From positions 38,481,877 to 38,525,425 of the forward strand of contig NC_068994.1 in the NCBI RefSeq assembly GCF_001194135.2: DNA of 43,549 bases, written 5' to 3'. Under the pieces are notes generated by a model that was given only the letters and a program-made list of their open reading frames with translations, was not told the origin of the DNA and did no database searches. Each line of letters begins with the position of its first letter. Positions within the stretch are counted from its first letter, which is position 1. This stretch comes from Octopus bimaculoides. Its lineage: Eukaryota. Made by a program: the position numbers and the translations under genes. Shown here piece by piece: positions 105-43,194 of this stretch.

Positions 105-427
105 TTAATTATGTGGTGTAGAGAGAGGAGACACCTGAGATAATGAAGGTACCATTGGTAGTGTTGTAACTTTAGGTACAGCTGGTAGAGGTGGTTTACA
201 ATTTGAAGTAAATTCACTTGTCATTGGTACTAAAGATGGTTGTTCGGTTATGTTAGATGTGGTCCCAGTTATAGTCAAAGGTATTTGGTCAGGATAACAG
301 GGAGTGTTATTATCGACATTAGGTTGATAGCGATACCCATTGTTGTTATCTCCCCTTGATCTGTTGAGTGTATGTGAAAGTTGATTTCTTCTATTCCATG
401 TCTGATCACTTTGGTAACGACACAGAT
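105..427 (-). CDS. Protocadherin copy A, terminal coding exon (proline-rich cytoplasmic tail, DLCRYQSD...PLSTPHN*)
   Basis: Acceptor tacttgcag|AT at 427, phase 1, joins the CCA G of the 151-nt exon to give GAT. Open to TAA at 107-105. 323 nt, homologous to five other copies. Confidence 0.88.
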
Positions 428-1130
428 CTGCAAGTATATTGATTTATAAATTATCTTATTCAAATTCTGTGAAAGACGAATTAAAGTGAAACTTTTAATT
501 ATATCTTTAGAAACTGGAAAAATTTAAATATCCATACACTTTAAAATAAATATATATGCATCTTCTTTACTTAAAAAATTTAACTATTGTACTAAATGTA
601 TATATGTATATTTAATGTAATGCAACAAATTTCGTCTGTCTGTCTGTCTACCTACATACTATTAAAACTGATTGCTTACTTGCTTGTCTGTAATTTAATA
701 CAGTCATACTGGTGCATAATGGGAAAATACTATGAATTAAGGTACACCTGAAATGTGAATACAAATGGACCACAGATTCCTGAGATAAGGGGTTTTTGGG
801 GTATTCATGAATACCCAAAACAGTGCATATTGGGAAAATACTCCGAAAATAATATAACCTTGAAAAGAAAGAAACTCTAATCTTTCAATTAGAGATATTA
901 TGATCAATGTCTTCTGTATTTTGAAGACAAACTTCATGAACTGGGCAAAAGTCTTAATGCCTTTAATTTCCCAATGAAAAAATACGAGTTGTTTTTACAG
1001 TAAATATTTCTATTTTCCCTTTTATTAAACACATTATAAGTTGTTTGTACTGTCAGTATTTATATTTTAACTTTCTTTAAACAGACAATATTCTAATTTT
1101 TTTAAAAGCATTTTTGGTAAACATTTCATA

Positions 1131-1735
1131 AAGGACCCATTCATATCTCAGTGTGAAATGATTTTTTCCCACAGGTTTTTCGAGTTCATTCAACATATCT
1201 CACCTTCAAACTCGCTGTAAGCCATTTTTTCCCCTGGAAAGAAATGGGTGGAGGGGTGGTGAGGACCTCAGAGATTCCTGGGATTTCATGGATTGTCTTT
1301 TTTCTTTTCCAAGTTATTTCATATGCTTTCAACGAATGTGACATCGAAATCACATGTAAACAGCTACTTTCCCCAGAAAAGGAAAGATTTGGCTGCTATT
1401 TATAGTACACCCTGCTGTCACGTAACAGCAATTTGTGATTAAGGATCCAAAATAACTTACGCAGAAACAGGTTGTGCTAGAAATAGCAGCCAAATCTTTC
1501 CCCTTCGATGTCACATTTGTTGAAAGCATGTGAAATAACCTGGAAAAAAAAAACAAAACAAAAAAAACATGCAAAACAACTTCATTGGTGGGAAATTCTG
1601 AAGTCTCCACCATTCCTCCACCTGTTTCTTTTCCAGAAGAAAGTGGCTTGCGGCAGGTTTGGAGGTGAGTTACATTGAATGCACCTGCAAAACCTGTGGA
1701 AAAATTATTTCATGCCAAAGTATGAATGGGTCCTT
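1131..1735. mobile_element. Fold-back / MITE-like non-autonomous DNA element with long imperfect inverted arms
   Basis: taaaggacccattcata (1129) is the reverse complement of tatgaatgggtccttta (1721-1737). The arms stay alignable inward to about 1412 and 1464 (e.g. ggaaagatttggctgctatt vs aatagcagccaaatctttcc). Confidence 0.75.
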
Positions 1736-1762
1736 TACAAAATATTTACCCAGAAGTCTACA

Positions 1763-1975
1763 TGAGGCTCCAATCTGATTTGGCAGAGTTTCTACAGCTG
1801 GATGCCCTTCCTAACGCCAATCACTCAGAAAGTGTAGTGGGTGCTTTTATGTGCTACCGGCACGAAGGCCAGTCAGGCGGTACTGGTAACGGCCACGCTC
1901 AGAATGGTGTATTTTATGTGCCACCCACACAAGAGCCAGTCCAGGGGCACTGGCAACGATCTCACTCAAAAATCC
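1763..1975 (+). mobile_element. Interspersed repeat fragment (ctacagctggatgcccttcctaacgccaa family) with a degenerate internal ~65-bp duplication
   Basis: GC-richer island. The same core motif recurs inverted at ~6990-7010 and direct at ~11620-11650. Confidence 0.6.
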
Positions 1976-2237
1976 TTATACATGCTACTGTGTAGATATT
2001 TTAGTTAATGATGTCAGACAATATAATCAAGACTGTGGATAGAGAAGTTGGCTCTAACAATGATGAATTTGACTATAATGAGGTTGATAATACAAAATTT
2101 AAGGGGGAAAACACTGTCTGTGTATCTGTGTGTGTATGTATAAAAGACTTTTCCATTTTTCCTTAGTATTAAACCTGCCTAATGTTCCTACACCTGTCTT
2201 TGTCTGTTTTCTATAAATTTGAACTTTATATATGAAA

Positions 2238-2380
2238 GTGAGGGTGTATAGCTTAGTGGTTAGGATGCTGAATTCATGATCTAGTGACCATGATTTCAAT
2301 TCCTATACTGGGTGGTGCATTGTGTTCTTGAGCAAAACATTTCATCTCACATTGCTTTGCAATCACTGTACACCTGTTCA
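2238..2380 (+). mobile_element. Degenerate tRNA-derived SINE
   Basis: A-box-like tagcttagtgg and B-box-like gatttcaattcc, followed by tgtgttcttgagcaaaacatttc, which resembles SINE core domains. Confidence 0.55.
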
Positions 2381-2406
2381 GATGATGTCAATTTGATGGA
2401 GAAAGG

Positions 2407-2940
2407 AGGCGCAGGAATGGCTGTGTGGTAAGTAGCTTGCTTACCAACCACATGGTTCCGGGTTCAGTCCCACTGCGTGGCATCTTGGGCAAGTGTCTTC
2501 TACTATAGCCACGGGCCGACCAAAGCCTTGTGAGTGGATTTGGTAGACGGAAACTGAAAGAAGCCTGTCGTATATATGTATATATATATATATGTGTGTG
2601 TTTGTGTGTCTGTGTTTGTCCCCCTAGCATTGCTTGACAACCGATGCTGGTGTGTTTATGTCCCTGTCACTTAGCAGTTNNNNNNNNNNNNNNNNNNNNN
2701 NNNNNNNNNNNNNNNNNNNNNNNNNNNNNNNNNNNNNNNNNNNNNNNNNNNNNNNNNNNNNNNNNNNNNNNNNNNNNNNNNNNNNNNNNNNNNNNNNNNN
2801 NNNNNNNNNNNNNNNNNNNNNNNNNNNNNNNNNNNNNNNNNNNNNNNNNNNNNNNNNNNNNNNNNNNNNNNNNNNNNNNNNNNNNNNNNNNNNNNNNNNN
2901 NNNNNNNNNNNNNNNNNNNNNNNNNNNNNNNGTATATATG

Positions 2941-2971
<31 letters not shown>

Positions 2972-3182
2972 TTGTGTGTCTGTGTTTGTCCCATCACCAT
3001 CGCTTGACAACCGATGCTGGTGTGTTTATGTCCCTGTCACTTAGCAGTTTGGCAAAAGAGACCGATAGAATAAGTACCAGGCTTACAAAGAATAAGTCCC
3101 GGGGTTGACTTGCTCGACCAAAGGCGGTGCTCCAGCATGACTGCAGTCAAATGACTGAAACAAGTAAAAGAGTAAAAGAGAG
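2407..3182 (+). mobile_element. tRNA-derived SINE with internal (TA)/(TG) microsatellite, interrupted by an N-gap with duplicated flanks
   Basis: A-box-like tggctgtgtgg and B-box-like ggttcagtcc, then ttgggcaagtgtcttctactatagc. 3' tail ccagcatgactgcagtcaaatgactgaaacaagtaaaagag. Related copies at 18995, 27335, 35575 and 39552. Confidence 0.75.
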
Positions 3183-3417
3183 TGAGCTAATTTGTGGCAT
3201 GAACATTTAATTACTATAAACAAATAATTTGTGCAGGTCATTTGGCAAAAGCTGAATGCTCATTTGTCATCTTCGATGGGAAAGTCCATGTTTCACTTGC
3301 AGAAAGCAAAATAGTTCTTTCCTTGAATATGTAAGTATCTCACTGTAGTAGGATATTTATGTAAACAAATTATCAGACTATACTATATTATAGTAATATT
3401 CATTGTTCCTAACTTAC

Positions 3418-3568
3418 CTGGAAGTTCCTCATAGTGTCCAGCACTACTGACATTCCAGCCATGACCACAGTCTGTGTGAGATGATAACACTGACATTTCA
3501 CTGAAATGGTCAGTATTGTTTAGTTCTCTGTAGCCTGGGGACATGCTTTCTTCTCTTGGAAGAAACAT
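3418..3568 (-). CDS. Protocadherin copy A, 151-nt cytoplasmic exon (MFLPREES...GHYEELP)
   Basis: Acceptor cttttag|ATG (phase 0), donor CCAG|gtaagt (phase 1). 151 nt in all five copies. Confidence 0.9.
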
Positions 3569-3885
3569 CTAAAAGTAGTGAAATAAATACATTTTATACA
3601 CTAATATTTCATCCTGTAACAATTGTTTCCACAGTGTAAGTTATATTGAAACATAAAACTTATTTTTCTTTTAGACTGAAATATTCTACAAGTCATCAGT
3701 TAATTAGTATATCAAATTAAACAATAACTTATTATTTTCATCATTGAGTTTAAAACTGATCAATTAGGAATATATATACTGATTGTGCATCCATAGATTT
3801 ATCAATTATAGTGATTACATAAACTTTACCATTATGAGTGGAATTTTGAAAACATTAAATCATTTTAAATTGATAATATTCTCAC

Positions 3886-6357
3886 CTGTGGATGTCCTCT
3901 CAAAGTCAGATCATTCCATCTATCACTGTCTACTATTAGTTGCTGAGATTTTTCCCCATTTCTCTCCAATGTGTACTGAACTCCAGGAGGAACACAAATA
4001 GGGTCAAACATATATTTTGAATGTGTGTTTAATGCAGGTGTAACCTTGTGGTACATATCAACACTGTTGTTATAGTTGCTATCTGTCTGCTTCAGTCTAT
4101 GAACTATACAGATTGATATAGAGATCACTATAACAACTGATACTATCACAGCTGCTATAACAATAACAATCATCACATTCAATTGGAGGCCATTACTTGA
4201 TTCTGTTGTTGTCTTTGAAGGGGTCTCAAATATCNNNNNNNNNNNNNNNNNNNNNNNNNNNNNNNNNNNNNNNNNNNNNNNNNNNNNNNNNNNNNNNNNN
4301 NNNNNNNNNNNNNNNNNNNNNNNNNNNNNNNNNNNNNNNNNNNNNNNNNNNNNNNNNNNNNNNNNNNNNNNNNNNNNNNNNNNNNNNNNNNNNNNNNNNN
4401 NNNNNNNNNNNNNNNNNNNNNNNNNNNNNNNNNNNNNNNNNNNNNNNNNNNNNNNNNNNNNNNNNNNNNNNNNNNNNNNNNNNNNNNNNNNNNNNNNNNN
4501 NNNNNNNNNNNNNNNNNNNNNNNNNNNNNNNNNNNNNNNNNNNNNNNNNNNNNNNNNNNNNNNNNNNNNNNNNNNNNNNNNNNNNNNNNNNNNNNNNNNN
4601 NNNNNNNNNNNNNNNNNNNNNNNNNNNNNNNNNNNNNNNNNNNNNNNNNNNNNNNNNNNNNNNNNNNNNNNNNNNNNNNNNNNNNNNNNNNNNNNNNNNN
4701 NNNNNNNNNNNNNATTTGCTGTGTTCTCCAGTGATGGTGTTCCTTTATCTTTTACTAAAACCTTAAACTCATACATGTTCTTTTCTTCTCTGTCTAGTGA
4801 CTCAGTTGTGGAAATAAATCCCACATCAGATATCTGAAATGGAAGAATATCTTTTCCATTAGATAACAAAGAAAAGGTTAATTGTCCTCCATCTCCAATA
4901 TCTGGGTCTGTAGCATTGACATATCCAACAGGGAAGTCTTTGTGTTCATTTTCATAGGTGAGAAACTTAAATACGTCCTGAGTAAACTGAGGTTGTACGT
5001 CATTTATATCAGTAACCATCAAAGAAAACTGTCTCTCTACTTTTAATGGAGGTAAACCATTATCTTGACATTTAAGGGTGAAATTAAAGCTCTTCTCACT
5101 CTCTCTATCTATTTCACCCTTGACAACAACTTTGTATTTCTTTTGAGAAATTGAGATTAGCTGCAGGTACTTATTTTGTAAATGACACTTCACTTGTCCA
5201 TTTACTCCATTGTCATTGTCAATAACTTTGACATAAGCAACGAAGCTGTGAATTTGAGTTGCTTCTGAGATGACAGCTGTGTTGCCAGTTGACTTAATTA
5301 CAAATTTGACATCAAAGTTTGGTGGATTGTTAATGTGACTGATTCCATTTATTAGAATAGGGACTGTTGAAGACATTGAAGGAATACCATTATCTCTGGC
5401 TTCAACAAATAATTTATAAATTCTTCCAAACTGAAATTTTTGCTTCAGAAACAACTCTCCTGTTGCTTCATCCAACCTAAAGCATTCTTTTATTTTATTT
5501 GGTGTTTTGGCATTATTAAAGATATAAGAAATTTTTCCATTTTCTCCTTCATCTAAATCTGTTGCAGATAGCCTCAGAATAGGTTTGTTTATTTTGTGCA
5601 TACCATTTACAGTGACATTGTAGATATTTTGCGGGAAAACAGGGGAGTTATCATTTTTATCTTCCACCAATATCTGTATATGAAATATACTTTCCTTTGG
5701 TGGTGATCCTCCATCTCTAGCAATTAATTGTATATTATATACATCTTTTTTCTCACGATCCAAGTTACTTTCCAAAATTAGTTGTAATAAATCAGTTCCA
5801 TCAGATTTTTTAGAAACAAACAATTTGAAAGGAATATCTTCATCTGCTTTCAGTCGATAAGAGAGTTTAGAATTCTGAACACTGAAATCTTTGTCAATAG
5901 CATTGGGAAGTGTTTCTGTGGTTCCTATCAAATCATTTTCATCAAATTGTATTTTAAGTTCCTTTTTTGGAAATATTGGATAATTATCATTGACATCATC
6001 AATTATAACTTTGATTTCTAATATCTTAATAAAAGAATGGCCTTGTTGAACTGCTATTTCCAATATCCTGAAACATTTCACATTATATAGACATAGAGAT
6101 TCTGCATCCAATATTGCACCTGTGTACAGTTGCCCTCCAGGTGTAACATTAAATAATTGAACAGTTCCATCAGTACTGCTCTGGAGTACATTAAATGTCA
6201 GTTTATTGCTCTCATCCTTCGTCTGGAAAAGTGTATCAGTGACAATATTTCCAATATAACTGTTTAAATCATTGTTCTCTTTCACATGGTAGATATGATC
6301 CACACACAAGTAGCAGTCAGCCAACAACAACAGCATAAGCATTAATACTGGAAACAT
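3886..6357 (-). CDS. Protocadherin copy A, large exon: signal peptide, EC1-EC6 (EC6 in gap 4235-4713), TM, juxtamembrane
   Basis: Cadherin motifs DVNDNYP, LDRE, DKNDNSP, DxD, DINDVQP. EC1 Cys-X5-Cys (LDAESLCLYNVKC). Hydrophobic TM VMIVIVIAAVIVSVVIVISISICIV. Acceptor tttcag| at 6364, donor CAG|gtgag at 3886. Confidence 0.95.
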
Positions 6358-6699
6358 TTTGAATCTGAAATATAATTTCATGCTGATATTCACAAACAAG
6401 AATTTAATAAATGTAGATAAAATATATCTTAACATTTAGTCTCATAACTCAATCACAAGTCAAATATAATTCTCACACTAGTAATAATAAATATTAAACA
6501 TACAAGTGAAGACAGAATTATGATTCTTTAATATAATTTGATTAAATTCATTGGAAATGAAAGTATATTTGAATAAAATTATATTTATGTTCTTGTCCTC
6601 CTCTTTTTAATAGCAGCATGTCAATGATTGATTACTTGGTTAACATACTAGACATACATAATTGTAAACAAAATCACAGTTTGACACTGGGAAACTCAT

Positions 6700-7080
6700 T
6701 CACCCTGTGTCGCTCTCTAGCCCACTTCTCTATTGTTCAACTTCTAAGGGTACATCTTCACACCTCATCACCATCTTTCCTTTTCCTATTGGAGTAATCA
6801 TGTATCTTCTCTACAAGACACCTGTTTTTATCTCTTTATCATATCTTAATTTCTTATCACCTGGCATATAACAACTTCCCTCAACACAACATATCCCAGT
6901 CAGATTCATGGTCCTGTATTGCCAATTTACACTGACCTAACTAGTGACAGTGCCACATAAGTGCAGCCAGTACACACTGAAATGGCAAGAGCATCCAGCT
7001 GTAGAAACCATACTACAGCAGAGACTGGAGCTTGATGCAGTACAACTCACTGGTCCTTGTGAAACTGACCATTTAATTCT
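6700..7080 (-). mobile_element. Degenerate retroelement-derived fragment in intron 1 of copy A
   Basis: Contains gagcatccagctgtagaaacc, the reverse complement of the motif at ~1790-1810. Absent from intron 1 of the other copies. Confidence 0.45.
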
Positions 7081-7774
7081 AGCATGAAAAATGAAAGCAT
7101 TAGAATGAATTCTTCTATAGATTTGCCATTATTACTAATTTTAAAATTATTATAATTAAGCATGTTAGATGTCTCATTCTGGTTTGAAGGAGTGTGTCAT
7201 AAATTCATTTCACATTCCTTTGGGTTGTTTTGAATAATATGAAGTTCATAACTTATTTAGTTTATTTAGCTTAGAATGGACCAACAACTTTCATCATGAA
7301 GGAGGCTAAATCAGAATAAAACAGCATTTTCTGACAATCCACAGGTGTCATTCTATGTGAGCTCAGTGATTTTAAGACACCAAGTCTGTTAAGGGAGTTA
7401 AGGATTCTGTAGATATTACAAGACAAGGGTACATCACTTGTATTGGTGCTACCATAATTCCATATTCTACAAAGTGGTTGGTAAATGAGTTAAGAAGGCT
7501 GCCTTAGCCTGGTCAGAGATATGGCGACATTTCCAGTGCAGGCGTCTCAATAAAATGCAAACAGTACCGTAGTTGGGACCTGGACATGAATCAAAAAGGT
7601 TTTGTTCGCTGGAATAGTGTATTCCTGGGAATGATATTTCATATTTTTAACATCAGTTATGAAGACACGACAACTCTGTCTTAAATTTCCTGGTCTTACA
7701 TATCATTAAACTTCTCTAAATGAATCTTTGGCAAACGAATAAAAAAATCATGTTGTTTAGTCCAAGCTCAGCTC

Positions 7775-7935
7775 CGACCAAGCGGACGGTGATCGAAGGT
7801 ATTCACGCTAAGAACATAAACTTTTCTCGGGGTAAAAAAAAATACGTTGTACAATGTGTGTCTAAAGACGCTAGGATGTTATACTAGGCATATTGGGCTG
7901 CTATTTCTAGCAGGTTAAAAATGACCACGTAAAAG
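7775..7935 (+). mobile_element. Interspersed repeat (ttggctgctatttctagcagg family) in intron 1 of copy A
   Basis: Motif shared with 15660-15690, 22955-22980, 31720-31740 and 40565-40595. Confidence 0.5.
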
Positions 7936-8345
7936 TCCTGCGTTACATAGTGAAGAGTAATCTCCCCTTTTTCTCATTCATCATGGCTCGACTTATCAAG
8001 TGTAAAATATTGTTGAAAATATACTTCGGTGATTTAACTATGTAACATAAAAGTACGTGTAAAACAAACGACTAACACTACAGCCTGTGATTTTTAATTA
8101 TTATTATAAGTTATAATTAGAGACTGACTCTGTAACTAAATATATCGAAAATAAAATACAATATATCTTTTAAGGAAATAAAGTTCAACAGTTTTAAGAT
8201 CAATATAATGAAATTTTCAACATAATTTTTAGTTACAAAAATGTATTATTAATAATTAACTACCGTCTTTTCTTTATCAAAATAATATTGTTATACTAGG
8301 GATATGACACTGCTATCTAGATATTGGTATATTTTTATCAAGATG

Positions 8346-8408
8346 GTGAGAGAGAGAGAGAGAGAGAGTGTGAGAGAGAGAGAGAGAAAGGGAGAAAGAG
8401 AGAGGGAG
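8346..8408. repeat. (GA)n microsatellite
   Basis: Visible gagagaga run. Confidence 0.9.
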
Positions 8409-8467
8409 ATGACCAAATATCTAAAGAGACAATTTATACAACAAAATAACATTGAATTAATGCTTAC

Positions 8468-8537
8468 CAGCAGTTGTCAATTGTTGCTGTCCTGTTTCAA
8501 TGTTCTGGTCACAAAGTTATGGTAGTAGCAGATTTCT
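8468..8537 (-). other. Predicted non-coding first exon of copy A
   Basis: Donor CTG|gtaagc at 8468/8467 at the same position as in B, C and D. No ATG inside. The 5' end is inferred from a TCAGA initiator-like motif. Confidence 0.6.
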
Positions 8538-8564
8538 GAGTAGTTAGGTATGTGATAGTGTCAT

Positions 8565-8714
8565 GTAGTTCTATCAAGTTGGTTGTGTAGTATGTAATGT
8601 GTGTTGTAGCCAATGACAAGCTGTCTATTATTCCAATGCAAGGAAACGGAAATACAACCTCCAGTTCTTGCAGTAAATGATGGGCTGACTCACAAAACAT
8701 TTCACTTAAACACA
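8565..8714 (-). promoter_or_regulatory. Conserved promoter block of copy A (TGACTCA 8686-8692, GGAAACGGAAAT 8642-8653, CCAAT 8633, AGCCAATGAC 8608-8617)
   Basis: Indel-free block present once per gene, just upstream of the first donor. Motifs match AP-1, ETS-like and NF-Y consensus sequences. Confidence 0.7.
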
Positions 8715-10139: not shown

Positions 10140-10462
10140 TTAATTATGTGGTGTAGATAGAGGAGACACCTGAGATAATGAAGGTACCATTGGTAGTGTT
10201 GTAACTTTAGGTACAGCTGGTAGAGGTGGTTTACAATTTGAAGTAAATTCACTTGTCATTGGTACTAAAGATGGTTGTTCGGTTATGTTAGATGTGGTCC
10301 TAGTTATAGTCAAAGGTATTTGGTCAGGATAACAGGAAGTGTTATTATCGACATTAGGTTGATAGTGATATCCATATTTGTTATCTCCCCTTGATCTGTT
10401 GAGTGTATGTGAAAGTTGATTTCTCCTATTCCATGTCTGATCACTTTGGTAACGACACAGAT
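10140..10462 (-). CDS. Protocadherin copy B, terminal coding exon
   Basis: Acceptor acttccag|AT at 10462. Hand translation DLCRYQSDQTWNRRNQL...KPPLPAVPKV...PLSTPHN is open to TAA at 10142-10140. 323 nt. Confidence 0.9.
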
Positions 10463-11544
10463 CTGGAAGTATATGGATTCATAAATTATCGTATTTAAAT
10501 TCAGTTAGAGACGAATTGAAGCAAAAATTTTTAATCAAATATTTAGAAACTGAAACATTAAATATCCATACACTTAAAAAGAAATATATATGCATATCCT
10601 TTACTTAAACATTTGTCCAACTCATTTATCTCTAGGAACCATATACACAAAAACATGGTTTTAATTCCACTTCCAAAATATAAATACAAAGACTCCCAAA
10701 AGGTGCAAGTTTCAGTAAAGATTTCTGTTTATTTCCCTCTCTTTCTCTTCACAAACACAACTGTGTATGTATGTATACATATATTTATGTGGAGTAAACG
10801 TAAGGACAAGCAAGTTAGGCATGTCGGTATACAAAATATATTAAATACTTTTAATATAAACAATGTACATATGTTTACATATAAAAAGGTTCAACTTACA
10901 CAGAATAGAAATCATATCAGGAGTTACCAACCTACTCCTTAAAAAATACTACCTAAACCACCATTCCCTCTTCCTTCTGCCTCTACTACTATCACTAGCC
11001 TCATTAACCCCTAACACCGAAATTTATTTTCCCCTCCTTCTACTTTGTATCCAAATACCTCCCAACTCTTCCTTCTAATACACTTAGTTCTCCAAAAAAT
11101 CATTCTGTCTTTACTCTCCTTTCTGTCAACACCTCAAATGTAAAATTCTTTCCTGAAGACAGAGGCTGGTATTATCTCATGATGGAATAAATTTACAATC
11201 ATTATTTTGGATACCAAGGCCCAAGAAACAGCTGTTGGACACGTAAAACTTTTATTGAACCTCTTTAATTCCAGATGTCCTTTCTATTATATGTAAGCTG
11301 GACCATTTTATATGTAAACACATGTACATTTTTTTGTATTAAATGTATTCAATACTTTTTGTATATTAACTTGTCTAACTTGCTTGTCCTTATATTTACT
11401 CCTCTACCAGCCCAAGTTTAAATCTCTTGAGCATTACAAAGTGTATTCTATACAAAGAATATCTGTCTCTCAGCTATAAACCATATATTTATGTGTGTTT
11501 ATGCTATATCATCAACATCATTTAACGTCCATATTCTATGCTGT

Positions 11545-30985: not shown

Positions 30986-31026
<41 letters not shown>

Positions 31027-32289: not shown

Positions 32290-32362
32290 CAACAGTTGTC
32301 GTTTGTAAAGTTGTTAGTGTATTATTACAGTGTTCTGGCAACAAAGTTGTAGCAATAGTTCT
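32290..32362 (-). other. Predicted non-coding first exon of copy D
   Basis: Donor TTG|gtaagt at 32290/32289. TCAGA at 32362. No ATG. Confidence 0.6.
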
Positions 32363-32389
32363 GAGTAGTTTGGTATGTAATAGTTTTAT

Positions 32390-32539
32390 ATAGTTCTGTC
32401 AAGTTCGTTGTGTAGTATGTAATGTGTGTTATAGCCAATGACAAGCTGTCTATTATTCCAGTGCAAGGAAACGGAAATACAGCCTCCAGTTCTTGCAGTA
32501 AATGGTAGGCTGACTCACACAATATTTCACTTAGACACA
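32390..32539 (-). promoter_or_regulatory. Conserved promoter block of copy D (distal CCAAT changed to CCAGT)
   Basis: AGCCAATGAC 32433, GGAAACGGAAAT, TGACTCA 32511-32517. Confidence 0.7.
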
Positions 32540-34004: not shown

Positions 34005-34303
34005 TTAGATATGTGATGTCGATAGAGGAGGTACCTCAGGTAACGTTGTTACTTTAGGTACTGCTGGTAGAGGTGGTTTACAGTTAGAAGTGAAGGCACT
34101 TGTCATTGGTACTGAAGATGGTTGTTCACTTATATTGGATGTGGTCCCAGTTATATTCAAAGGGATTTGGTCAAGATGACTAGAATTGTTAACATTTGGT
34201 TGGTAGTGATAGCAATAATTGTTATCTCCCCTTGATCGTTTGAGTGTGTGTGGAAGTTGATTTCTCCTATTCCATGTGTGATCACTTTGATAACGACATA
34301 GAT
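34005..34303 (-). CDS. Protocadherin copy E, terminal coding exon (8 codons shorter than A, B and F)
   Basis: Acceptor atttccag|AT at 34303. Hand translation is open to TAA at 34007-34005 (...TLPEVPPLSTSHI*). 299 nt. Confidence 0.87.
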
Positions 34304-35063
34304 CTGGAAATATATCGATTTATAGGTTAGCTTTTATAAAATTATTATGCATGATAAATGGAAGCAAAATTTCTTAGGAAGGTTGTTAGTAACGAAAAAT
34401 CGAAGTATGAATGTATGTAAAAACATGAATAACGTCTAACTACTACATAGATATGAGCATGATGTACAAAATCAAAGATTTGGTTTCACATTCAAAATAA
34501 GAATAAACGTTCCAAGTGTTTTAAATAAACGATATTTATGGGTTTGGTAATAATATTTTATATATTTATGAATGAGTGTGCATGTGTGTGCATAACACAC
34601 TGCTGAAGCATGGAATAAACTACCTGCATCAGTTGTTAGCTGTCTATACACTACATCCTCCAGAATTTCCATACTTCTTGAAATTCACCAACAGTACACC
34701 CAACTCTGTTTCATTGTTTGTCCAAAGAATTTTTCACTGTTCACTTCCTGAGCGTATTCTATGTACTGTTGATGCTTTCTCTTATGAGTAGTACATTCTC
34801 TGATGAGTGGTAGTGTACCGAAGCACTGCATACAAGTTCATTATATTATTATATTATGCTTCTCTCTCTTCCTCTCTAACAAACATTCATTCAAAAAGAA
34901 ATCGATTATATTCAGACCTGGAGATGGATGTGGTCTACAAGGTTTAAAATCTCCAGGTCACACTATATCTCATAATGGTACACCTCCACCTATATCAGTA
35001 TTTAAAGGCACCCCCATAACCACTACAAACACACCGTGTGTGTGTTTGTTTGTGTGTGTGTGT

Positions 35064-35479
35064 TATTTCTTTACTACCCACAAGGGGCTACACACAGAGC
35101 TGACAAACAAGGACAGACAAACGGATTAAGTCGATTATATCGACCCCAGTGCGTAACTGGTACTTATTTAATCGAACCCGAAAGGATGAAAGGCAAAGTC
35201 GACCTCAGCGGAATTTGAACTCAGAACGTAGCGGCAGATGAAATACCTATTTCTTTACTGCCCACAAGGGGCTACACACAGAGGGGACAAACAAGGACAG
35301 GCAAACGGATTAAGTCGATTATATCGACCCCAGTGCGTAACTGGTACTTATTTAATCGACCCCGAAAGGATGAAAGGCAAAGTCGACCTTGGCGGAATTT
35401 GAACTCAGAACGTAGCGGCAGATGAAATACCACTAAGCATTTCGCCTGGCGTGCTAACGTTTCTGCCAGCTCGCCGCCT

Positions 35480-35480
<1 letters not shown>
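35064..35480 (-). mobile_element. Young tRNA-derived SINE with a 184-bp tandem duplication of its 3' part
   Basis: Minus strand reads aaggcggcgagctggcagaaacgttagcacg...ttctgagttcaaattcc. Repeat units start at 35064 and 35248 and are near-identical. Confidence 0.85.
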
Positions 35481-35514
<34 letters not shown>

Positions 35515-35574
35515 TGGGTTCTCCTTTATAAAAGTAAAATTAGTAATTTCCTTGCAAAGAAAATTATATAAATG

Positions 35575-35810
35575 GCGTAGGCACTGGCTTGTCTGTGTGG
35601 GTAAGAATTTCACTTGTCAATCATATGGCTTCAAATTTAATATCACTGCATGGAACCCTGGGCAAGTGTCTTCTAATACAGCCCTAGGCTGACAAAAGCT
35701 ATGTGAATGGTGAATGGAAACTGCCGGAAAAAGACTTGTGTGCATGGGTTTGGGGTGAGTACTTATGTGGCCTTGTCTTGACGTCATGTGATAGTTGTCA
35801 ACGACCTTCA
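35575..35810 (+). mobile_element. Degenerate tRNA-derived SINE in intron 3 of copy E
   Basis: aggcactggcttgtctgtgtgg...ctgggcaagtgtcttctaatacagcc...tggaaactg. Confidence 0.6.
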
Positions 35811-36055
35811 GAATCACACAAGTAATGTTGTGTATTTCTAGTATTTCATTAAAAAAAGCATTTTAAGCCTTGTGGAAAGGATGTCTTTTTTGGACACAAA
35901 TGAAGATTAGTGACAGGAAGGACATCTGACATAAACGAATTTTGTTCAGCTCATACAAGCATGGAAGCATGAACATTAGAACTAACGACGATCGTAACTA
36001 ACTGTATTAAAATACATTTACAAGTTTTAGAGTATATTGCAGAGATATTCAGTAC

Positions 36056-36206
36056 CTGGCAGTTCCTCATAATGTCCAGCACTACTGACACTCCAACCAT
36101 GACCACTATCAGTGAGAGATGACAATGTTGCCATCTCATTGAATTGGTCAGAACTGTTTAGTTCTCTGTAACCTGGAGCCATACTTTCTTCTCTTGGAAC
36201 AAACAT
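36056..36206 (-). CDS. Protocadherin copy E, 151-nt cytoplasmic exon
   Basis: Hand translation MFVPREESMAPGYRELNSSDQFNEMATLSSLTDSGHGWSVSSAGHYEELP. Donor is the altered CCAG|gtactg. Confidence 0.85.
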
Positions 36207-36502
36207 CTAAAAACAGTAAAATAAATCCAATGTATTTCATACTATTTCATAATTCTAGTTTTGTTAGCATATTATTAGGTATAACATCAAGTATTACAAT
36301 TTATATAGATCCTATTAATTATCATGTGAGTTAGTATAAAATTTTAAACAGTAATTTAGAATCTTCATCTTTTAAATTAGAATTGATCAAATGCTATTAA
36401 CTTTATTCTTTTACACCCTGCGGAAGTGTTGCTAAAGTTCTGAATAAATTTCTTCAAATTTCATGCTAATACTGGAATTTTAAAAAGTGAATATTATCTC
36501 AC

Positions 36503-38907
36503 CTGTTCATGTTGTCTTAATGTCCGATTATCCCATCTATCACTTGGCATGGTTCTGTAGTGAATATCTTCCTTGTCAACAATTGGTTGCTGAGATTTCT
36601 TCAGATTTCTCTCCAGTGTGTACTGAACTCCAGGAGGAACACAAGTAGGATCAAATATATATTTTGATTGGATGTTTAATGTAGGTGTAACCTTGTGGTA
36701 CATATCAACACTACTATCATAATTGCTATCTGTCTGCTTCATTCTATGAACTATACAGATTGATATAGAGATCACTATAACAACTGATACTATCACAGCT
36801 GCTATAACAATAACAATCATCACATTCAATTGGAGACCATTACTTGATTCTGTTGTTGTCTTTGAAGGGGTCTTAAATATCTTTGATGTGTTGTTACTAA
36901 CTGTTAGAGTCAAAGACAAAGTTGTTGTTGATGACAGAACTGGACTACCACTGTCTTTCACACCTAATTCCAGTTCATAGANNNNNNNNNNNNNNNNNNN
37001 NNNNNNNNNNNNNNNNNNNNNNNNNNNNNNNNNNNNNNNNNNNNNNNNNNNNNNNNNNNNNNNNNNNNNNNNNNNNNNNNNNNNNNNNNNNNNNNNNNNN
37101 NNNNNNNNNNNNNNNNNNNNNNNNNNNNNNNNNNNNNNNNNNNNNNNNNNNNNNNNNNNNNNNNNNNNNNNNNNNNNNNNNNNNNNNNNNNNNNNNNNNN
37201 NNNNNNNNNNNNNNNNNNNNNNNNNNNNNNNNNNNNNNNNNNNNNNNNNNNNNNNNNNNNNNNNNNNNNNNNNNNNNNNNNNNNNNNNNNNNNNNNNNNN
37301 NNNNNNNNNNNNNNNNNNNNNNNNNNNNNNNNNNNNNNNNNNNNNNNNNNNNNNNNNNNNNNNNNNNNNNNNNNNNNNNNNNNNNNNNNNNNNNNNNNNN
37401 NNNNNNNNNNNNNNNNNGTGATATCATGGTCTGAGTGGGGATGGTAGTGGACATTAAGACTGAAAGGGTTAACATTAGGGAAACTGAAATAGGGAGCATT
37501 ATCATTTAAATCTATAATCTCAACAACAACATTTGCTGTGTTCTCCAGTGATGGTGTTCCTTTATCTTTTACTAAAACCTTAAACTCATACCTGTTCTCT
37601 TCTTCTCTGTCTAGTGACTCAGTTGTAGAAATAAATCCCATATCAGATATCTGAAATGGTAAATTATCTTTTCCATTTGTCAACAGAGAATAGATCAATT
37701 GTCCTCCATCTCCAGCATCTGGGTCTGTAGCATTGACATATCCAACAGGGAAGTCTTTGTGTTCATTTTCATAGGTGAGAAACTTAAATGTGTCCTGGCT
37801 AAACTGAGGTTGTACATCATTTATGTCAGTGACCATCATAGAAAACTGTTTCTCCACTGTCAATGGCGGTAAACCATTATCTTGACATTTAATGGTGAAA
37901 TTAAATCTCTTCTCACTCTCTCTATCTATTTCACTCTTGACAATAACTTTGTATTTCTTTACAGACTCTGAGATTAGCTGCAGGTATTTATTTTGTAAAT
38001 GACACTTCACTTGTCCATTTTCTCCACTGTCATTGTCAATAACTTTGACATAAGCAACGAAGCTGTGAATTTGAGCTGCTTCTGAGATGACAGCTGTGTT
38101 TCCAGTTGACTTTAAGACAAATCTGACATCAATGTTTGGTGGATTGTTAATGTGACTGATTCCATTTATAAAAGCTGTAACTGTTGATGACATTGACGGT
38201 CTACCATTATCTCTGGCTTCAATAAATAGCTCATAAATTTTACCAAAATCAAAGTCTGTCTTCAAAAACAACTCACCCGTTGCTTCATCTAAATGAAAGC
38301 ATTCTTTTATCATTTTGGGTGTTTTAGCATTATTGAAGACATAAGAAATTCTTCCATTTTCTCCTACATCTAAATCTGTAGCAGACAACCTTACAACAGG
38401 TTTGTTTACGTCATGTGTATCATTTATAGTGACATTGTAAATATTCTGGGAGAATACAGGGTAGTTATCGTTTTTATCGTCTACAAATATTTTTATATCC
38501 AATACACCTTTCTTTGATGGAGATCCTTCATCTGTGGCAATTAACTGAATATTGTAAATGTCTTTTGTCTCACGGTCTAAGTTACCCTCCAAAATTAGTT
38601 GTAATAGATCTGTTCCATCTGGGTTTTTAGAAACAAACAGCTGAAATGGTATATCTACTTTCTCTTTGAGTCGGTAAGTGAGTTTAGAATTCTGAATGCT
38701 AATATCATTATCAATGGCATTTGGAAGTGTTTCTTTTCTTCCTTTTGTCACACTTTCATCATATTTTAAATGAAATTCTTTGTTTGGGAAAATAGGATAA
38801 TTATCATTGACATCTTCTATCATAACTTTGATTTCTAATATCTTAATAACAGAATGGCCATATTGAAGTGCCATTTCTAATATCCTGAAACATTCCACAT
38901 TATACTG
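36503..38907 (-). CDS. Protocadherin copy E, large exon (5' end hidden in gap 38908-39551, EC6 gap 36982-37417)
   Basis: EC1 end through EC5, end of EC6 (YELELGVKDSGSPVLSSTTTL), TM matching A and B. Donor CAG|gtgag at 36503. Confidence 0.9.
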
Positions 38908-39551
38908 NNNNNNNNNNNNNNNNNNNNNNNNNNNNNNNNNNNNNNNNNNNNNNNNNNNNNNNNNNNNNNNNNNNNNNNNNNNNNNNNNNNNNNNNNNNNN
39001 NNNNNNNNNNNNNNNNNNNNNNNNNNNNNNNNNNNNNNNNNNNNNNNNNNNNNNNNNNNNNNNNNNNNNNNNNNNNNNNNNNNNNNNNNNNNNNNNNNNN
39101 NNNNNNNNNNNNNNNNNNNNNNNNNNNNNNNNNNNNNNNNNNNNNNNNNNNNNNNNNNNNNNNNNNNNNNNNNNNNNNNNNNNNNNNNNNNNNNNNNNNN
39201 NNNNNNNNNNNNNNNNNNNNNNNNNNNNNNNNNNNNNNNNNNNNNNNNNNNNNNNNNNNNNNNNNNNNNNNNNNNNNNNNNNNNNNNNNNNNNNNNNNNN
39301 NNNNNNNNNNNNNNNNNNNNNNNNNNNNNNNNNNNNNNNNNNNNNNNNNNNNNNNNNNNNNNNNNNNNNNNNNNNNNNNNNNNNNNNNNNNNNNNNNNNN
39401 NNNNNNNNNNNNNNNNNNNNNNNNNNNNNNNNNNNNNNNNNNNNNNNNNNNNNNNNNNNNNNNNNNNNNNNNNNNNNNNNNNNNNNNNNNNNNNNNNNNN
39501 NNNNNNNNNNNNNNNNNNNNNNNNNNNNNNNNNNNNNNNNNNNNNNNNNNN

Positions 39552-39915
39552 GTCCCACTGTGTGGCACCTTGGTCAAGTCTCTTCTATTACAGTCTAACT
39601 GAACACTTGTGAAAGTATTTGAGTATTTGGTAGATGGAAAGAGAAAGCCGTCCAGTGCGTGTTTGTGTGTATGCATATGTATGTGTGTGTGCATGCCTGC
39701 ATGCATGTGTGTGTGTGTATCTTTGTGATTGTCTGCCACCACTGCTTGACAACTGGTATTGTTTTGTGTAAAGTCTCTGAAACTTAGCAGTTTGACAAAA
39801 GAGACCGATAGCATAAGCATCGAGCTTAAAAACTAAGTACTGTAGTCGATTTATTCAATTAAACCCTTCAAAGTGGTGCCCCAGCATGGTCACAGTCCAA
39901 TGACTGAAGCAAGTC
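39552..39915 (+). mobile_element. tRNA-derived SINE (family of 2407-3182), 5' end in gap
   Basis: gtcccactgtgtggcaccttggtcaagt...gcttgacaactgg...aaaagagaccgatag...ccagcatggtcacagtccaatgactgaagcaagt. Confidence 0.7.
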
Positions 39916-40409
39916 AAAAAAAAAAAAAAGGTGGGGGATATGACAGAGAGAGAAGGGGAAGATAAATACAAAATACGTACATAGCTATGTTATTCTTAGT
40001 TACCACATACCTCTTGCAATATATTCTATAATATATTATTTACACTTCTGACCTGATAAAAACAATGCATGTACACACACATATACTTTACTTTCAAAAT
40101 ATGCCCAAAATAATGCTGATGTTTTTAATATAACAACCTTTTATTGTGAGTTTTCAGAGTGGGAAATTGTTGTACAGAAAATTTTGTGGTATTCGTTCCT
40201 GCTCTATGTAACCTTTGTTCAAATCTCATAATGATCAACTTCAACTTTTATTTTTTCAGAGTCGTTAATTAAAGTACAATTTCAGCATTGGATTGATCTT
40301 TCTTCCCCATCTTTTTGATACTCACTTGTCTCTATGATAGATCCCTAATAAACGGTTTCAAGATTACATCGAAAATTTCATATCTACACTTATGGTAGTT
40401 ATGCTGCAT

Positions 40410-40660
40410 AACTCAACTTCTCTAGATACATGCCTAGCAAGAACGATCAAACCTATGATTCACAGCATTGACGTTAAGAACATCATATTTTCTTATAGAA
40501 GATTTGAAAAAATACACTGTTATGTGACATTCCATTTCTAAAAACTGCAGGATACGAATCGAGAGAGATTTGGCTGTTATCTCTAACAGGTCAAGCAACG
40601 TCGTTAAAAAAAAAAAACTTCCTCATTAGTGCGTTAAGAGTAACCTCCCTTCCTAATAAC
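40410..40660 (+). mobile_element. Interspersed repeat in intron 1 of copy E
   Basis: Close homologue of 15525-15745 (gagagagatttggctgttatctctaacaggtcaagc...ttaagagtaacctccc). Confidence 0.55.
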
Positions 40661-41222
40661 ACTGCAAAGTCGCTCATTCATAAAATGAACCATTCTAAAG
40701 AAAATAGAAAACTATTTCACGATATAGAGCAAAAACTTGATAAACAATGCAACTAATATAATCTACATCCTGTCATTATCATAATTATATCCAATCATTN
40801 NNNNNNNNNNNNNNNNNNNNNNNNNNNNNNNNNNNNNNNNNNNNNNNNNNNNNNNNNNNNNNNNNNNNNNNNNNNNNNNNNNNNNNNNNNNNNNNNNNNN
40901 NNNNNNNNNNNNNNNNNNNNNNNNNNNNNNNNNNNNNNNNNNNNNNNNNNNNNNNNNNNNNNNNNNNNNNNNNNNNNNNNNNNNNNNNNNNNNNNNNNNN
41001 NNNNNNNNNNNNNNNNNNNNNNNNNNNNNNNNNNNNNNNNNNNNNNNNNNNNNNNNNNNNNNNNNNNNNNNNNNNNNNNNNNNNNNNNNNNNNNNNNNNN
41101 NNNNNNNNNNNNNAATAGTTGTTAGTTGTTTATATTGTTGTTAAAGTACTGTTTCAGTCTTCTGGTCACAAAGTTGTAATAGTGGCAGTAGTTCTGAGTA
41201 GTTTGGTATGTAACAGTGTTAT

Positions 41223-41372
41223 GTAGTTCTATCAAGTTGGTTGTGTAGTATGTAATGTGTGTTATAGCCAATGACAAGCTGTCTATTATTCCAATGCAAG
41301 GAAACGGAAATACAACCTCCAGTTCTTGCAGTAAATGATGGGCTGACTCACAAAATATTTCACTTAGACACA
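41223..41372 (-). promoter_or_regulatory. Conserved promoter block of copy E
   Basis: AGCCAATGAC 41266, GGAAACGGAAAT, TGACTCA 41344-41350. TCAGA at 41195. The first-exon donor presumably lies in the gap ending at 41113. Confidence 0.7.
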
Positions 41373-42871
41373 CTCATATATAGATACATACATATACATG
41401 TGTGTGGTGAGAAGGTACCCAACTAAATGGATGGAAATATTAATAATGTTTAAAGCAATGAAATATAAAATTAAAGTATATTAAAAATATATTATATTTT
41501 AATTTTAGTGCATAAAAGTTATTTTCTAACTTCAGTCAAAGTTTTAAAACTTTTCATCTCAGATCTGCCTTTGGCTTTATAAAATTATCTGCTTGAGACA
41601 TCCTTAATAAATGTCATAGAATAATATTTTTAGAAGATAATTTCATTATAAAATTGTTGAGCCCATTTGAAAATACGAAATTATGGCTCCAAATAATGGT
41701 ATTGAACAATGATTGGAATTGAAGTAATTCTTACTAATAAAGAAGTAATAATTTTGAAATTGAAATAAATCTTTGTAAATTTCTCTTTTAAAACCAAACA
41801 TGAATATTCATCAAAATTGAATCCTGTTAATTTATTTCTGATATATTCATATGTCATATATCTATTGTTTTTCTTACTTTAATTTCTTTTTGCATACATT
41901 AATACTAACTCCCATTTCACTTATCAACTTATCAATAAAGTATATTCTTTATATTGTTTTGAAATAGTAATCTAATGGTGAAAATTCAGAAACAGAGTAA
42001 AGTATTTTGTATACTTTAACTACATAACAAAAATACTTTTAAAGAGAAGAAATATTGTTTTTCCTGGGCTTAAATGAAAGTCTTTCTATATAAGATGGAA
42101 ATATTGAAATTATGCTATCTTCAATAGCTTTTATAAGAAAATGTCCAGAAACTACAATGGAGAATTGTGTTATATATTTTTGTATGGCTTCCCTATGTAT
42201 ATATATATCCTAATATCTTCAGTATGACAGCTTCAATAACATACAAGTTTCTCTAAGCAAACTTTGGTAGATATCAACTGCTAGTTTCTGAGAATATTTC
42301 ATTCTTAACTGTACCAGTCATTCCAAATATTTTGGTAATTCTGTCATATTATCTGCTTGTAATTCCTTAGTATAAATGAATTTACTTCAATTGATGATTT
42401 AATAAGAAAAAATTATCTATTTTGGTGAAAATTTATCATAAATTTATAACTTGAAGAAATGTTATGACGATGTTGATATTAATATTAAATCCTTTATAAT
42501 TACTTTTCATATTTCATTCAGATATTTGTAGTGATATAAAAACTCTATTTTATAAAAGATAANNNNNNNNNNNNNNNNNNNNNNNNNNNNNNNNNNNNNN
42601 NNNNNNNNNNNNNNNNNNNNNNNNNNNNNNNNNNNNNNNNNNNNNNNNNNNNNNNNNNNNNNNNNNNNNNNNNNNNNNNNNNNNNNNNNNNNNNNNNNNN
42701 NNNNNNNNNNNNNNNNNNNNNNNNNNNNNNNNNNNNNNNNNNNNNNNNNNNNNNNNNNNNNNNNNNNNNNNNNNNNNNNNNNNNNNNNNNNNNNNNNNNN
42801 NNNNNNNNNNNNNNNNNNNNNNNNNNNNNNNNNNNNNNNNNNNNNNNNNNNNNNTTCTAAATATTGCAGCA

Positions 42872-43194
42872 TTAGTTTTGTGGTGTTGATAGAGGTGGTA
42901 CTTGAGGTATTGAAGGTACCTTTGGTAATGTTGTTACCTTAGGTACAGCTGGTAGAGGTGGTTTACAGTTTGAAATAAAGGCACTTGTCATTGGCACTGT
43001 AGATGATTGTTCAGTTGTGTTAGATGTGGTCCCAGCTGTAGTCAAAGGTATGTGGTCGAGATGACAAAAAGAGTTCTTGTCAACATTTGGTTGATAGTGA
43101 TATTCACTGTTGTTACTTCCTGTTGATCTGTTGAGAGAGTGTTGAAGTTGATTTCTTCTATTCCATGTACGATCACTTTGATAACGACATAGAT
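42872..43194 (-). CDS. Protocadherin copy F, terminal coding exon (rest of the gene is beyond the window)
   Basis: Acceptor ttccag|AT at 43194. Hand translation DLCRYQSDRTWNRRNQL...KPPLPAVPKV...PLSTPQN* is open to TAA at 42874-42872. 323 nt. Confidence 0.87.

What the first reader, a model, noticed from the sequence alone, without database searches (positions are those of the whole stretch)
105..43194. Fully phase-compatible exon cassettes: the array could assemble chimeric protocadherins by splicing between neighbouring genes
Seen: in every resolvable copy the first exon has no ATG and the large exon starts exactly 7 nt before the ATG (6364/6357, 14935/14928, 22419/22412, 30805/30798). The large exon ends at a phase-0 AG|GTGAG donor, the middle exon is always 151 nt (phase 0 to 1), and the last exon always starts AG|AT. 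All genes face the same way and are 7-10 kb apart. Established: vertebrate Pcdh-alpha and -gamma clusters splice variable ectodomain exons to shared constant exons, whereas octopus Pcdhs were described as complete tandem genes. Inference: any promoter, ectodomain and downstream tail could be joined in frame if transcription reads through, giving a distributed variable/constant system. Shared phases are also the expected result of simple duplication, so only transcripts can decide.
Basis: partly seen in the sequence, partly recalled or inferred. Interest (0 to 1): 0.72.

Follow-up and report, generated by a model that had tools for sequence, protein, structure and literature searches.

The report
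Tandem octopus protocadherin genes, ordinary structure
The window holds five to six complete, separately promoted protocadherin genes of Octopus bimaculoides. Their matching exon phases are inherited from tandem duplication, and nothing here or in public gene models shows them swapping heads and tails by splicing.

Summary
On the minus strand, five four-exon protocadherin units plus the last exon of a sixth share one structure. The large-exon acceptor lies 7 nt before the ATG in 4 of 4 copies. The donor is CAG/GAG|GTGAGA in phase 0, the middle exon is 151 nt in 5 of 5, and the last exon starts AG|AT in 6 of 6.

Caveats: every large exon is broken by an N run whose length is wrong, g3's donor phase cannot be read, and g1's putative exon 1 does carry an ATG. 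Ungapped O. sinensis orthologues confirm a continuous 2397-nt, phase-0 large exon.

The shared phases are one inherited character. A protocadherin only about 53% identical has the same 0/1 pattern. Only like-for-like cross junctions stay in frame; all others stop within 1 to 50 codons.

Each unit has its own strongly conserved 100-nt promoter block, its own roughly 300-nt intron 2, and its own tail exons under purifying selection. All public models of these genes use within-gene junctions.

Read-through between octopus PCDH genes is documented, but the recorded junctions run from a donor inside the last exon to the next large-exon acceptor. They are not module swaps. The similar 3' halves come from gene conversion: dS is 0.03-0.19 there against about 0.55 in EC1-4.

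Verdict: ordinary and already known. The chimera idea remains untested and unlikely.

The parts
105..8694 (-). Gene g1. Promoter block 8595-8694. Putative exon 1 ends at donor 8468. Large exon 6364-3886 (ATG 6357; gap 4235-4713). Middle exon 3568-3418. Last exon 427-105 (TAA at 107-105). GT inside the last exon after base 153.
   Evidence: Tail matches UniProt A0A0L8H7G4 (P0002) and aa 839-1655 of XP_014774838.1.
10140..16452 (-). Gene g2. Promoter block 16353-16452. Exon-1 donor 16218. Large exon 14935-12623 (ATG 14928; gap 12976-13203). Middle exon 12321-12171. Last exon 10462-10140. GT inside the last exon after base 10188.
   Evidence: P0001 (A0A0L8H8Q5) is 100% identical across the large->mid->last junctions. 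Pfam Cadherin E=2e-55 and Cadherin_2 above cut-off.
17919..23739 (-). Gene g3. Promoter block 23640-23739. Exon-1 donor 23517. Large exon 22419-19942 (ATG 22412; gap 19948-20613 ends 6 nt before the donor). Middle exon 19659-19509. Last exon 18436-17919 (the 199-N gap 17942-18140 replaces about 1 nt). GT inside the last exon after base 18165.
25221..32519 (-). Gene g4. Promoter block 32420-32519. Exon-1 donor 32290. Large exon 30805-28215 (ATG 30798; gaps 28278-28873 and 29425-29434, the latter with 53-nt duplicated flanks). Middle exon 27932-27782. Last exon 25540-25221. GT inside the last exon after base 25269.
   Evidence: Tail = RefSeq LOC106872396 (P0006), with its own large->mid->last junctions.
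34005..41352 (-). Gene g5. Promoter block 41253-41352. Exon-1 donor lost in gap 40800-41113. Large-exon 5' end lost in gap 38908-39551. Large exon readable at 38907-37418 and 36981-36503 (gap 36982-37417). Middle exon 36206-36056. Last exon 34303-34005. GT inside the last exon after base 34035.
42872..43194 (-). Gene g6, last exon only (acceptor CAG|AT at 43194, TAA near 42872). The rest lies beyond the window end.
7563..7624 (-). A 62-nt stretch in g1 intron 1. The superseded Gnomon fusion model XP_014774838.1 used it as a bridging mini-exon (EYTIPANKTFLIHVQVPTTVL; weak donor CT|GTTTGC) to keep g2 and g1 in one frame.

Best explanation
The window is part of the Octopus bimaculoides protocadherin super-cluster. 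It is a head-to-tail array of at least five complete, autonomous genes, made by tandem duplication of a four-exon unit of about 8 kb.

The unit has four exons:
- a non-coding exon 1;
- a large exon of about 2.4 kb encoding the signal peptide, EC1-6, the transmembrane segment and the juxtamembrane part;
- a 151-nt exon;
- a last exon of about 320 nt.

The identical intron phases (0 after the large exon, 1 after the middle exon) and the fixed exon lengths are inherited from the ancestral unit. They are not a device for mixing. Each gene is transcribed from its own promoter and spliced within itself. The large-exon donor meets its own acceptor about 300 nt downstream, long before polymerase reaches the neighbour's acceptor about 9 kb away.

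The resemblance to a variable head plus constant tail arises at the DNA level. Gene conversion or unequal exchange homogenises the 3' half (EC4/5 through the tail) between copies, while EC1-4 diverge.

Shown: the anatomy, phases, divergence pattern, promoter-block conservation and the junctions in annotated models. Inferred: the transcription start, autonomy of transcription, and conversion as the homogenising mechanism.
For: - Species and identity. P0001 is 100% identical to the g2 tail and is from O. bimaculoides. Full-length relatives are about 955 aa. Pfam finds Cadherin and Cadherin_2.
- Unit structure and coordinates.
- Ungapped O. sinensis orthologues have the same four exons and a 2397-nt stop-free large exon in phase 0.
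- A protocadherin about 53% identical to the g2 query has a phase-0 large-exon donor and a 142-nt middle exon, which is also 1 mod 3. The phase pattern is therefore family-wide.
- Only like-for-like cross junctions are in frame.
- Intron 2 is 282-317 nt, against about 9.05 kb to the neighbour's middle exon (coordinates).
- The 100-nt promoter block is about 90% invariant over 7 copies and 97% identical to O. sinensis. Its flanks are 15-45% invariant.
- Tail exons are intact in 6 of 6 copies, with dN/dS 0.19-0.47.
- Synonymous divergence (dS) is 0.51-0.64 in EC1-4, 0.07-0.19 in EC4-6, and 0.03 (g3-g4) and 0.12 (g1-g2) in the tails. High-identity tracts include introns.
- Public models P0001, P0002, P0006 and P0141 all use within-gene large->mid->last junctions.
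- Literature: full gene duplication plus gene conversion, and no variable/constant splicing (PMC9068888).
Against: - No transcript data for this locus could be examined, so within-gene splicing rests on gene models.
- The spacer from each stop codon to the next promoter block is only 1.42-1.50 kb. In g4 the first AATAAA/ATTAAA comes 1276 nt after the stop, so some read-through is plausible.
- Read-through PCDH transcripts are reported in O. vulgaris, and conjoined models exist in three species.
- All large exons are gapped, so intactness of each copy is inferred from relatives.
Confidence: 0.8

Rival explanations
1. Read-through pre-mRNAs are spliced between neighbouring genes at like-for-like sites (large exon n to middle exon n-1, or middle exon n to last exon n-1). 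This would give functional chimeric protocadherins and a distributed variable/constant system.
For: These two junction types are in frame in all four neighbour pairs. All genes share orientation and the spacers are short. Read-through in the family is documented.
Against: - No public model has such a junction.
- The gene's own acceptor is about 300 nt away, the neighbour's about 9 kb. Unlike vertebrate variable exons, each donor here has a nearby competing acceptor.
- Every unit keeps its own tail under purifying selection.
- The tails differ by only 1.4-14% at non-synonymous sites (dN 0.014-0.138), so swapping would add little diversity.
- The published statement is to the contrary.
Confidence: 0.05
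2. Conjoined read-through transcripts of a different kind. A GT inside the last exon (..TTLP[K/M]|GTACCT, 13-17 codons before the stop) is used as an alternative donor. It is spliced to 3'-flank sequence or to the next gene's large-exon acceptor. In this window the product would be a protocadherin whose last 10-16 residues (by copy) are replaced by 14-15 frameshifted ones, probably a minor or NMD-prone isoform. This can coexist with the best explanation.
For: - The GT is conserved in 6 of 6 copies.
- Models in three species branch exactly there: the O. bimaculoides fusion XP_014774838.1, and O. vulgaris CAI9732429, CAI9732435 and CAI9732428.
- In a distant gene pair, RefSeq XP_052829003.1 joins a last-exon internal donor CAAAAT|GTAAGC to the next gene's large-exon acceptor and stops after 7 codons.
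- Styfhals 2022 reports read-through fusions.
Against: - The site GTACCT is a weak donor, and its conservation may simply reflect the coding motif LPKVP.
- The giant fusion models may be products of ORF-maximising predictors. The O. bimaculoides one needs a contrived 62-nt exon.
- No reads were examined.
Confidence: 0.45
3. Promoter sharing. Exon 1 of an upstream gene is spliced to the large exon of a downstream gene (for example 16218->6364). One promoter could then drive several ectodomains without changing any protein.
For: The junction leaves the downstream ORF intact, because exon 1 is non-coding in g2-g4. RefSeq numbers two neighbouring distant PCDH genes as isoforms of one gene.
Against: Each unit has its own conserved promoter block. 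The upstream gene's own large-exon acceptor is 1.1-2.1 kb away, against about 9.9 kb. The RefSeq merger is explained by the conjoined isoform X2, not by a shared 5' exon.
Confidence: 0.1

Closest known systems
Cephalopod clustered protocadherin expansion (Albertin et al. 2015 and 2022; Wang & Ragsdale 2017; Styfhals et al. 2019)
   Same: Species, gene family, head-to-tail tandem arrangement, multi-exon genes with one large exon for the ectodomain plus transmembrane segment, and homogenisation by gene conversion.
   Different: Nothing essential. This window is a piece of that published cluster in the gapped v1-derived assembly.
Vertebrate Pcdh-alpha/gamma variable/constant clusters
   Same: Each large ectodomain exon has its own promoter with a conserved element, ends in a 5' splice site without a stop, and lies in a same-orientation tandem array. 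The membrane-proximal parts are homogenised.
   Different: There is no single shared set of constant exons here; every unit carries its own two tail exons and stop. The large exon is a second exon with its own 3' splice site, so downstream units are not invisible to the spliceosome. The promoter block has a different sequence from the vertebrate conserved sequence element (that comparison is from my own knowledge and was not tested).
Vertebrate Pcdh-beta cluster
   Same: Tandem, complete, independently promoted protocadherin genes without shared constant exons. RefSeq names these octopus genes 'protocadherin beta-like'.
   Different: Beta genes are single-exon with a very short cytoplasmic tail (my own knowledge). 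The octopus genes have four exons and a cytoplasmic region of roughly 250 aa.
Conjoined (read-through) genes of tandem neighbours
   Same: Annotated models join an upstream gene's late donor to the second exon of the downstream gene.
   Different: Here the donor is a cryptic GT inside the last coding exon. In this window the join is out of frame.

Membership tests
Protocadherin (cadherin superfamily) | Several extracellular cadherin repeats, including the protocadherin-type N-terminal domain | tested here: met
   Pfam PF00028 Cadherin at E=2e-55 with 4 stretches, and PF08266 Cadherin_2 at 26.9 bits against a cut-off of 23, on the g2 N-terminal 575 aa.
Protocadherin (cadherin superfamily) | A single transmembrane segment followed by a cytoplasmic tail | tested here: met
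   A hydrophobic stretch NVMIVIVIAAVIVSVVIVISISICIV lies in the only open frame after the gaps in g1, g2 and g5. Judged by eye; no transmembrane predictor was run.
Cephalopod clustered PCDH expansion | Octopus origin, and close paralogues in head-to-tail tandem with one large ectodomain exon | tested here: met
   100% match to O. bimaculoides proteins. Five units on one strand with a 7.3-8.7 kb period. Same layout in O. sinensis and O. vulgaris loci.
Vertebrate-type variable/constant Pcdh cluster | One shared set of constant exons downstream of all variable exons | tested here: not met
   Each of the five units has its own middle and last exon with its own stop, and a sixth last exon is present.
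Vertebrate-type variable/constant Pcdh cluster | Variable exons are first exons without a 3' splice acceptor | tested here: not met
   A polypyrimidine-AG acceptor lies 7 nt before each ATG, and a conserved upstream non-coding exon with a GTAAG donor is present. Exon 1 is inferred, not shown by transcripts.
Vertebrate-type variable/constant Pcdh cluster | Each variable exon has its own promoter with a conserved sequence element | tested here: inconclusive
   A 100-nt block is nearly invariant in 5 paralogues and 2 O. sinensis copies. Promoter activity and the transcription start were not tested.
Vertebrate-type variable/constant Pcdh cluster | Mature mRNAs join any one ectodomain exon to tail exons that are shared with other ectodomain exons | not testable with these tools
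   No reads were available. All protein models covering these genes use each gene's own tail.
Conjoined read-through genes | A transcript containing exons of two adjacent same-strand genes | tested here: inconclusive
   Seen only in gene models: XP_014774838.1 spans g2 and g1 through a contrived exon; XP_052829003.1 and CAI9732428.1 at related loci; and a literature statement. No reads were examined.

The most novel reading that the evidence does not exclude
Neighbouring octopus protocadherin genes are joined at a functionally relevant level by cis-splicing of read-through transcripts, at like-for-like sites. Ectodomains and cytoplasmic tails of different genes would then be combined. This would be a second, independently evolved, splicing-based layer of Pcdh diversity on top of gene duplication.
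Probability: 0.05. Interest if true: 0.75.

Novelty: already known. Interest (0 to 1): 0.22.

Why it matters
If cross-gene splicing really mixed ectodomains and tails, it would overturn the published view that cephalopods diversify protocadherins only by gene duplication. It would also deepen the convergence with vertebrates. What the evidence shows is more modest:
- This is a textbook tandem array whose phases are inherited.
- Its constant-like 3' half is kept alike by gene conversion.
- Read-through products, where annotated, alter only the extreme C-terminus.

Two by-products may be useful to people working on octopus PCDH regulation. One is a very strongly conserved 100-nt promoter block, a candidate counterpart of the vertebrate conserved sequence element. 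The other is a conserved alternative donor inside the last exon, which explains why annotation pipelines keep fusing these genes.

Tried and rejected
- Transcript-derived (Logan) proteins carrying the tail. The tail search gave 8 hits, none from Logan. That search is not exhaustive: it missed full-length paralogues with similar tails.
- Locus look-up for P0006: not on record.
- Albertin 2015: the paper is not held, and one literature query was malformed.
- RefSeq 'isoform X1-X18' of a neighbouring PCDH gene, which I suspected might mean several ectodomains sharing one tail. Mapping showed two adjacent genes, each with its own tail, linked only by conjoined isoform X2.
- An apparent cross-gene middle exon in the O. 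vulgaris fusion model. It was a tblastn artefact; the gene's own middle exon matches 100%.
- The giant Gnomon models as evidence for in-frame chaining. The g2->g1 bridge needs a cryptic donor plus a 62-nt exon with a weak donor, so it looks like ORF-maximising stitching.
- The promoter block in a distant PCDH locus: absent.
- Rfam: no match.
- Supplement of Styfhals 2022: the annotation GTF is not held, and there are no details on the read-through transcripts.
- Polyadenylation hexamers. They are present in every spacer but uninformative in DNA of 19-27% GC.


Full report
**What is there.** The window (43,549 nt, 12 N runs) carries a tandem array on the minus strand. Self-comparison shows repeat units of about 7.3-8.7 kb that align through exons and introns at 78-95% identity. 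The long ORFs translate to protocadherins. On the g2 ectodomain, Pfam gives Cadherin (E=2e-55, four stretches) and the protocadherin-type Cadherin_2 domain above its cut-off. The cytoplasmic part of g2 is 100% identical to Octopus bimaculoides A0A0L8H8Q5. The g1 and g4 tails match A0A0L8H7G4 and RefSeq LOC106872396. The window is therefore a piece of the published O. bimaculoides PCDH cluster.

**Check of the observation.**
- The large-exon acceptor lies 7 nt before the ATG in the four copies whose 5' ends are readable.
- The donor CAG/GAG|GTGAGA is present in five copies.
- The middle exon is 151 nt in five copies.
- The last exon begins AG|AT in six copies and ends at a homologous TAA.
- An upstream conserved segment ends in TG|GTAAG at 8468, 16218, 23517 and 32290.

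Two details fail or cannot be decided. The putative exon 1 of g1 contains an ATG at 8564, opening a six-codon uORF. In g3 the donor sits 6 nt from a gap, so its phase is unreadable.

**The gaps, tested first.**
- Every large exon is broken in the same homologous stretch (EC5 to the transmembrane segment), which is the most similar part of the copies.
- On each side of each gap exactly one frame is open, and the pieces are collinear with the 955-aa paralogue XP_052829025.1.
- The missing lengths are 121, 105, about 199, about 150 and 51 aa, for N runs of 479, 228, 666, 596 and 436. Frame across the gaps is therefore meaningless in this assembly.
- The 199-N gap in g3's last exon stands for a single base.
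- The 10-N gap in g4 is flanked by an exact 53-nt duplicate, an unmerged overlap.
- An ungapped O. sinensis orthologous locus (L001) has the same four exons. In two copies its large exon is 2397 nt = 799 codons from ATG to a phase-0 CAG|GTGAGA donor, with no stop.

Continuity and phase 0 are thus well supported by relatives, though not demonstrable in the window. In those O. sinensis copies the acceptor lies 20 nt before the annotated ATG, so the 7-nt spacing is a local trait.

**Is the phase match more than inheritance?** No. The copies are paralogues, so their agreement is one inherited character. A protocadherin only about 53% identical, on the same chromosome (L002), also ends its large exon in phase 0 (..CAT CAG|GTAAGG). 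Its middle exon is 142 nt, again 1 mod 3.

I translated all cross-gene combinations for the four neighbour pairs:
- Large(n)->mid(n-1) and mid(n)->last(n-1) stay in frame.
- Large->next large stops after 14-15 codons.
- Mid->next large stops after 1-7 codons.
- Large->next last stops after about 50 codons.
- Mid->next mid stops after 17-19 codons.

'Fully phase-compatible' is therefore true only for like-for-like swaps, as in any tandem duplicate.

**Evidence that the units are autonomous.**
1. Upstream of each putative exon 1 lies a 100-nt block. It reads TGTGAGTCAGCC...GCATTGGAATAATAGACAGCTTGTCATTGGCTACAACACAC, with an AP-1-like site, two inverted CCAAT boxes and a TATA-like motif. It is about 90% invariant over five O. 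bimaculoides and two O. sinensis copies and 97% identical between species. Its flanks are 15-45% invariant, and in O. sinensis they are unalignable further upstream. This looks like a core promoter kept in every unit.
2. Intron 2 is only 282-317 nt, whereas the neighbour's middle-exon acceptor is about 9.05 kb away (coordinates). Unlike vertebrate variable exons, each donor here has a close competing acceptor.
3. All tail exons are intact, with dN/dS of 0.19-0.47, similar to the ectodomain.
4. Every public protein model that maps to the window uses within-gene large->mid->last junctions.
5. Albertin et al. 2022 state that cephalopods do not make PCDH diversity by splicing variable exons to shared exons, but by full gene duplication with gene conversion.

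**Why the array looks variable/constant.** Synonymous divergence (dS) varies sharply along the gene:

| Region | dS |
|---|---|
| EC1-4, all pairs | 0.51-0.64 |
| EC4-6 | 0.07-0.19 |
| Transmembrane/juxtamembrane part | 0.14-0.19 |
| Tail exons, g3-g4 | 0.03 |
| Tail exons, g1-g2 | 0.12 |
| Tail exons, other pairs | 0.38-0.54 |

The high-identity tracts include intron and flank sequence. That pattern indicates gene conversion or unequal exchange, not only purifying selection. It also explains why the assembler failed in that stretch.

**Read-through.** The premise is not idle. The spacer from each stop to the next promoter block is only 1424-1498 nt. Styfhals et al. [quoted passage not shown]

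- RefSeq XP_052829003.1 joins an internal donor in the last exon of one gene (CAAAAT|GTAAGC) to the next gene's large-exon acceptor 16 kb away. It stops after 7 codons.
- In the subfamily of this window, models in three species leave the last exon at a conserved GT..TTLP[K/M]|GTACCT, 13-17 codons before the stop. These are the superseded 6188-aa Gnomon fusion that starts with g2 and continues into g1, and O. vulgaris CAI9732429, CAI9732435 and CAI9732428. The last of these continues in frame into the next large exon.
- That GT is present in all six copies here. Joined to the 7-nt leader it is out of frame, which is why the Gnomon fusion needed a contrived 62-nt exon at 7563-7624 with a weak donor.

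No model shows a head/tail swap.

**Verdict.** The features are those of a known gene family in a known cluster. The decisive data already exist in part (public O. vulgaris Iso-Seq), but I could not query them here.

Noticed in passing
window 8595-8694, 16353-16452, 23640-23739, 32420-32519, 41253-41352 (minus strand); L001 1305-1403 and 17384-17482: A 100-nt block just upstream of the putative exon 1 is nearly invariant in all five units and 97% identical in O. sinensis, far above its flanks and above coding DNA. It carries TGAGTCA, two inverted CCAAT boxes and AATAATAG. It is a candidate core promoter, possibly a functional counterpart of the vertebrate Pcdh conserved sequence element. It is absent from a distant PCDH locus, and I found no paper describing it.
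   Followed up: partly
window: last exonic base 153, 10188, 18165, 25269, 34035, 42920 (minus strand): A conserved GT lies inside the last coding exon (..TTLP[K/M]|GTACCT). Public gene models of three octopus species branch or fuse to the next gene at this point. It probably causes the recurrent PCDH gene fusions in annotations.
   Followed up: partly
window, large exons against tails of g1-g5: Divergence is mosaic. dS is about 0.55 in EC1-4, 0.07-0.19 in EC4-6 and the transmembrane part, and 0.03 (g3-g4) and 0.12 (g1-g2) in the tail exons. The high-identity tracts run into introns. This indicates gene conversion of the 3' half.
   Followed up: yes
window 29372-29487; 17942-18140; the gaps at 4235-4713, 12976-13203, 19948-20613, 28278-28873 and 36982-37417: Assembly artefacts. 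There is an exact 53-nt duplicate on either side of the 10-N gap. A 199-N gap replaces one base. All five large-exon gaps fall in the same near-identical stretch, and their N lengths are wrong by up to about 280 nt.
   Followed up: yes
window 7563-7624 and 10188 (minus strand): The superseded RefSeq model XP_014774838.1 (6188 aa) chains g2, g1 and further genes beyond the window start. It does so through a cryptic donor and a contrived 62-nt exon in g1 intron 1.
   Followed up: yes
the five spacers between each stop codon and the next promoter block: Spacer length is strikingly constant (1424, 1445, 1460, 1464 and 1498 nt) although the sequence is only about 80% conserved. In g4 the first AATAAA/ATTAAA is 1276 nt after the stop.
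   Followed up: no
window 8564 (minus strand): g1 alone has an ATG in the putative 5' UTR exon, opening the uORF MTLSHT*.
   Followed up: no
window 35064-35431: A 184-nt unit is duplicated in tandem (96% identity) inside g5 intron 3. (GA)n lies at 8348-8409 and (TA)n at 15163-15243 and 24568-24618.
   Followed up: no
L002 70327 -> 86263 (O. bimaculoides CM046614.1, 40.13-40.23 Mb): RefSeq isoform XP_052829003.1 is a conjoined transcript model between two distant-subfamily PCDH genes. This seems to be why RefSeq numbers both genes' products as isoforms X1-X18 of one gene.
   Followed up: partly
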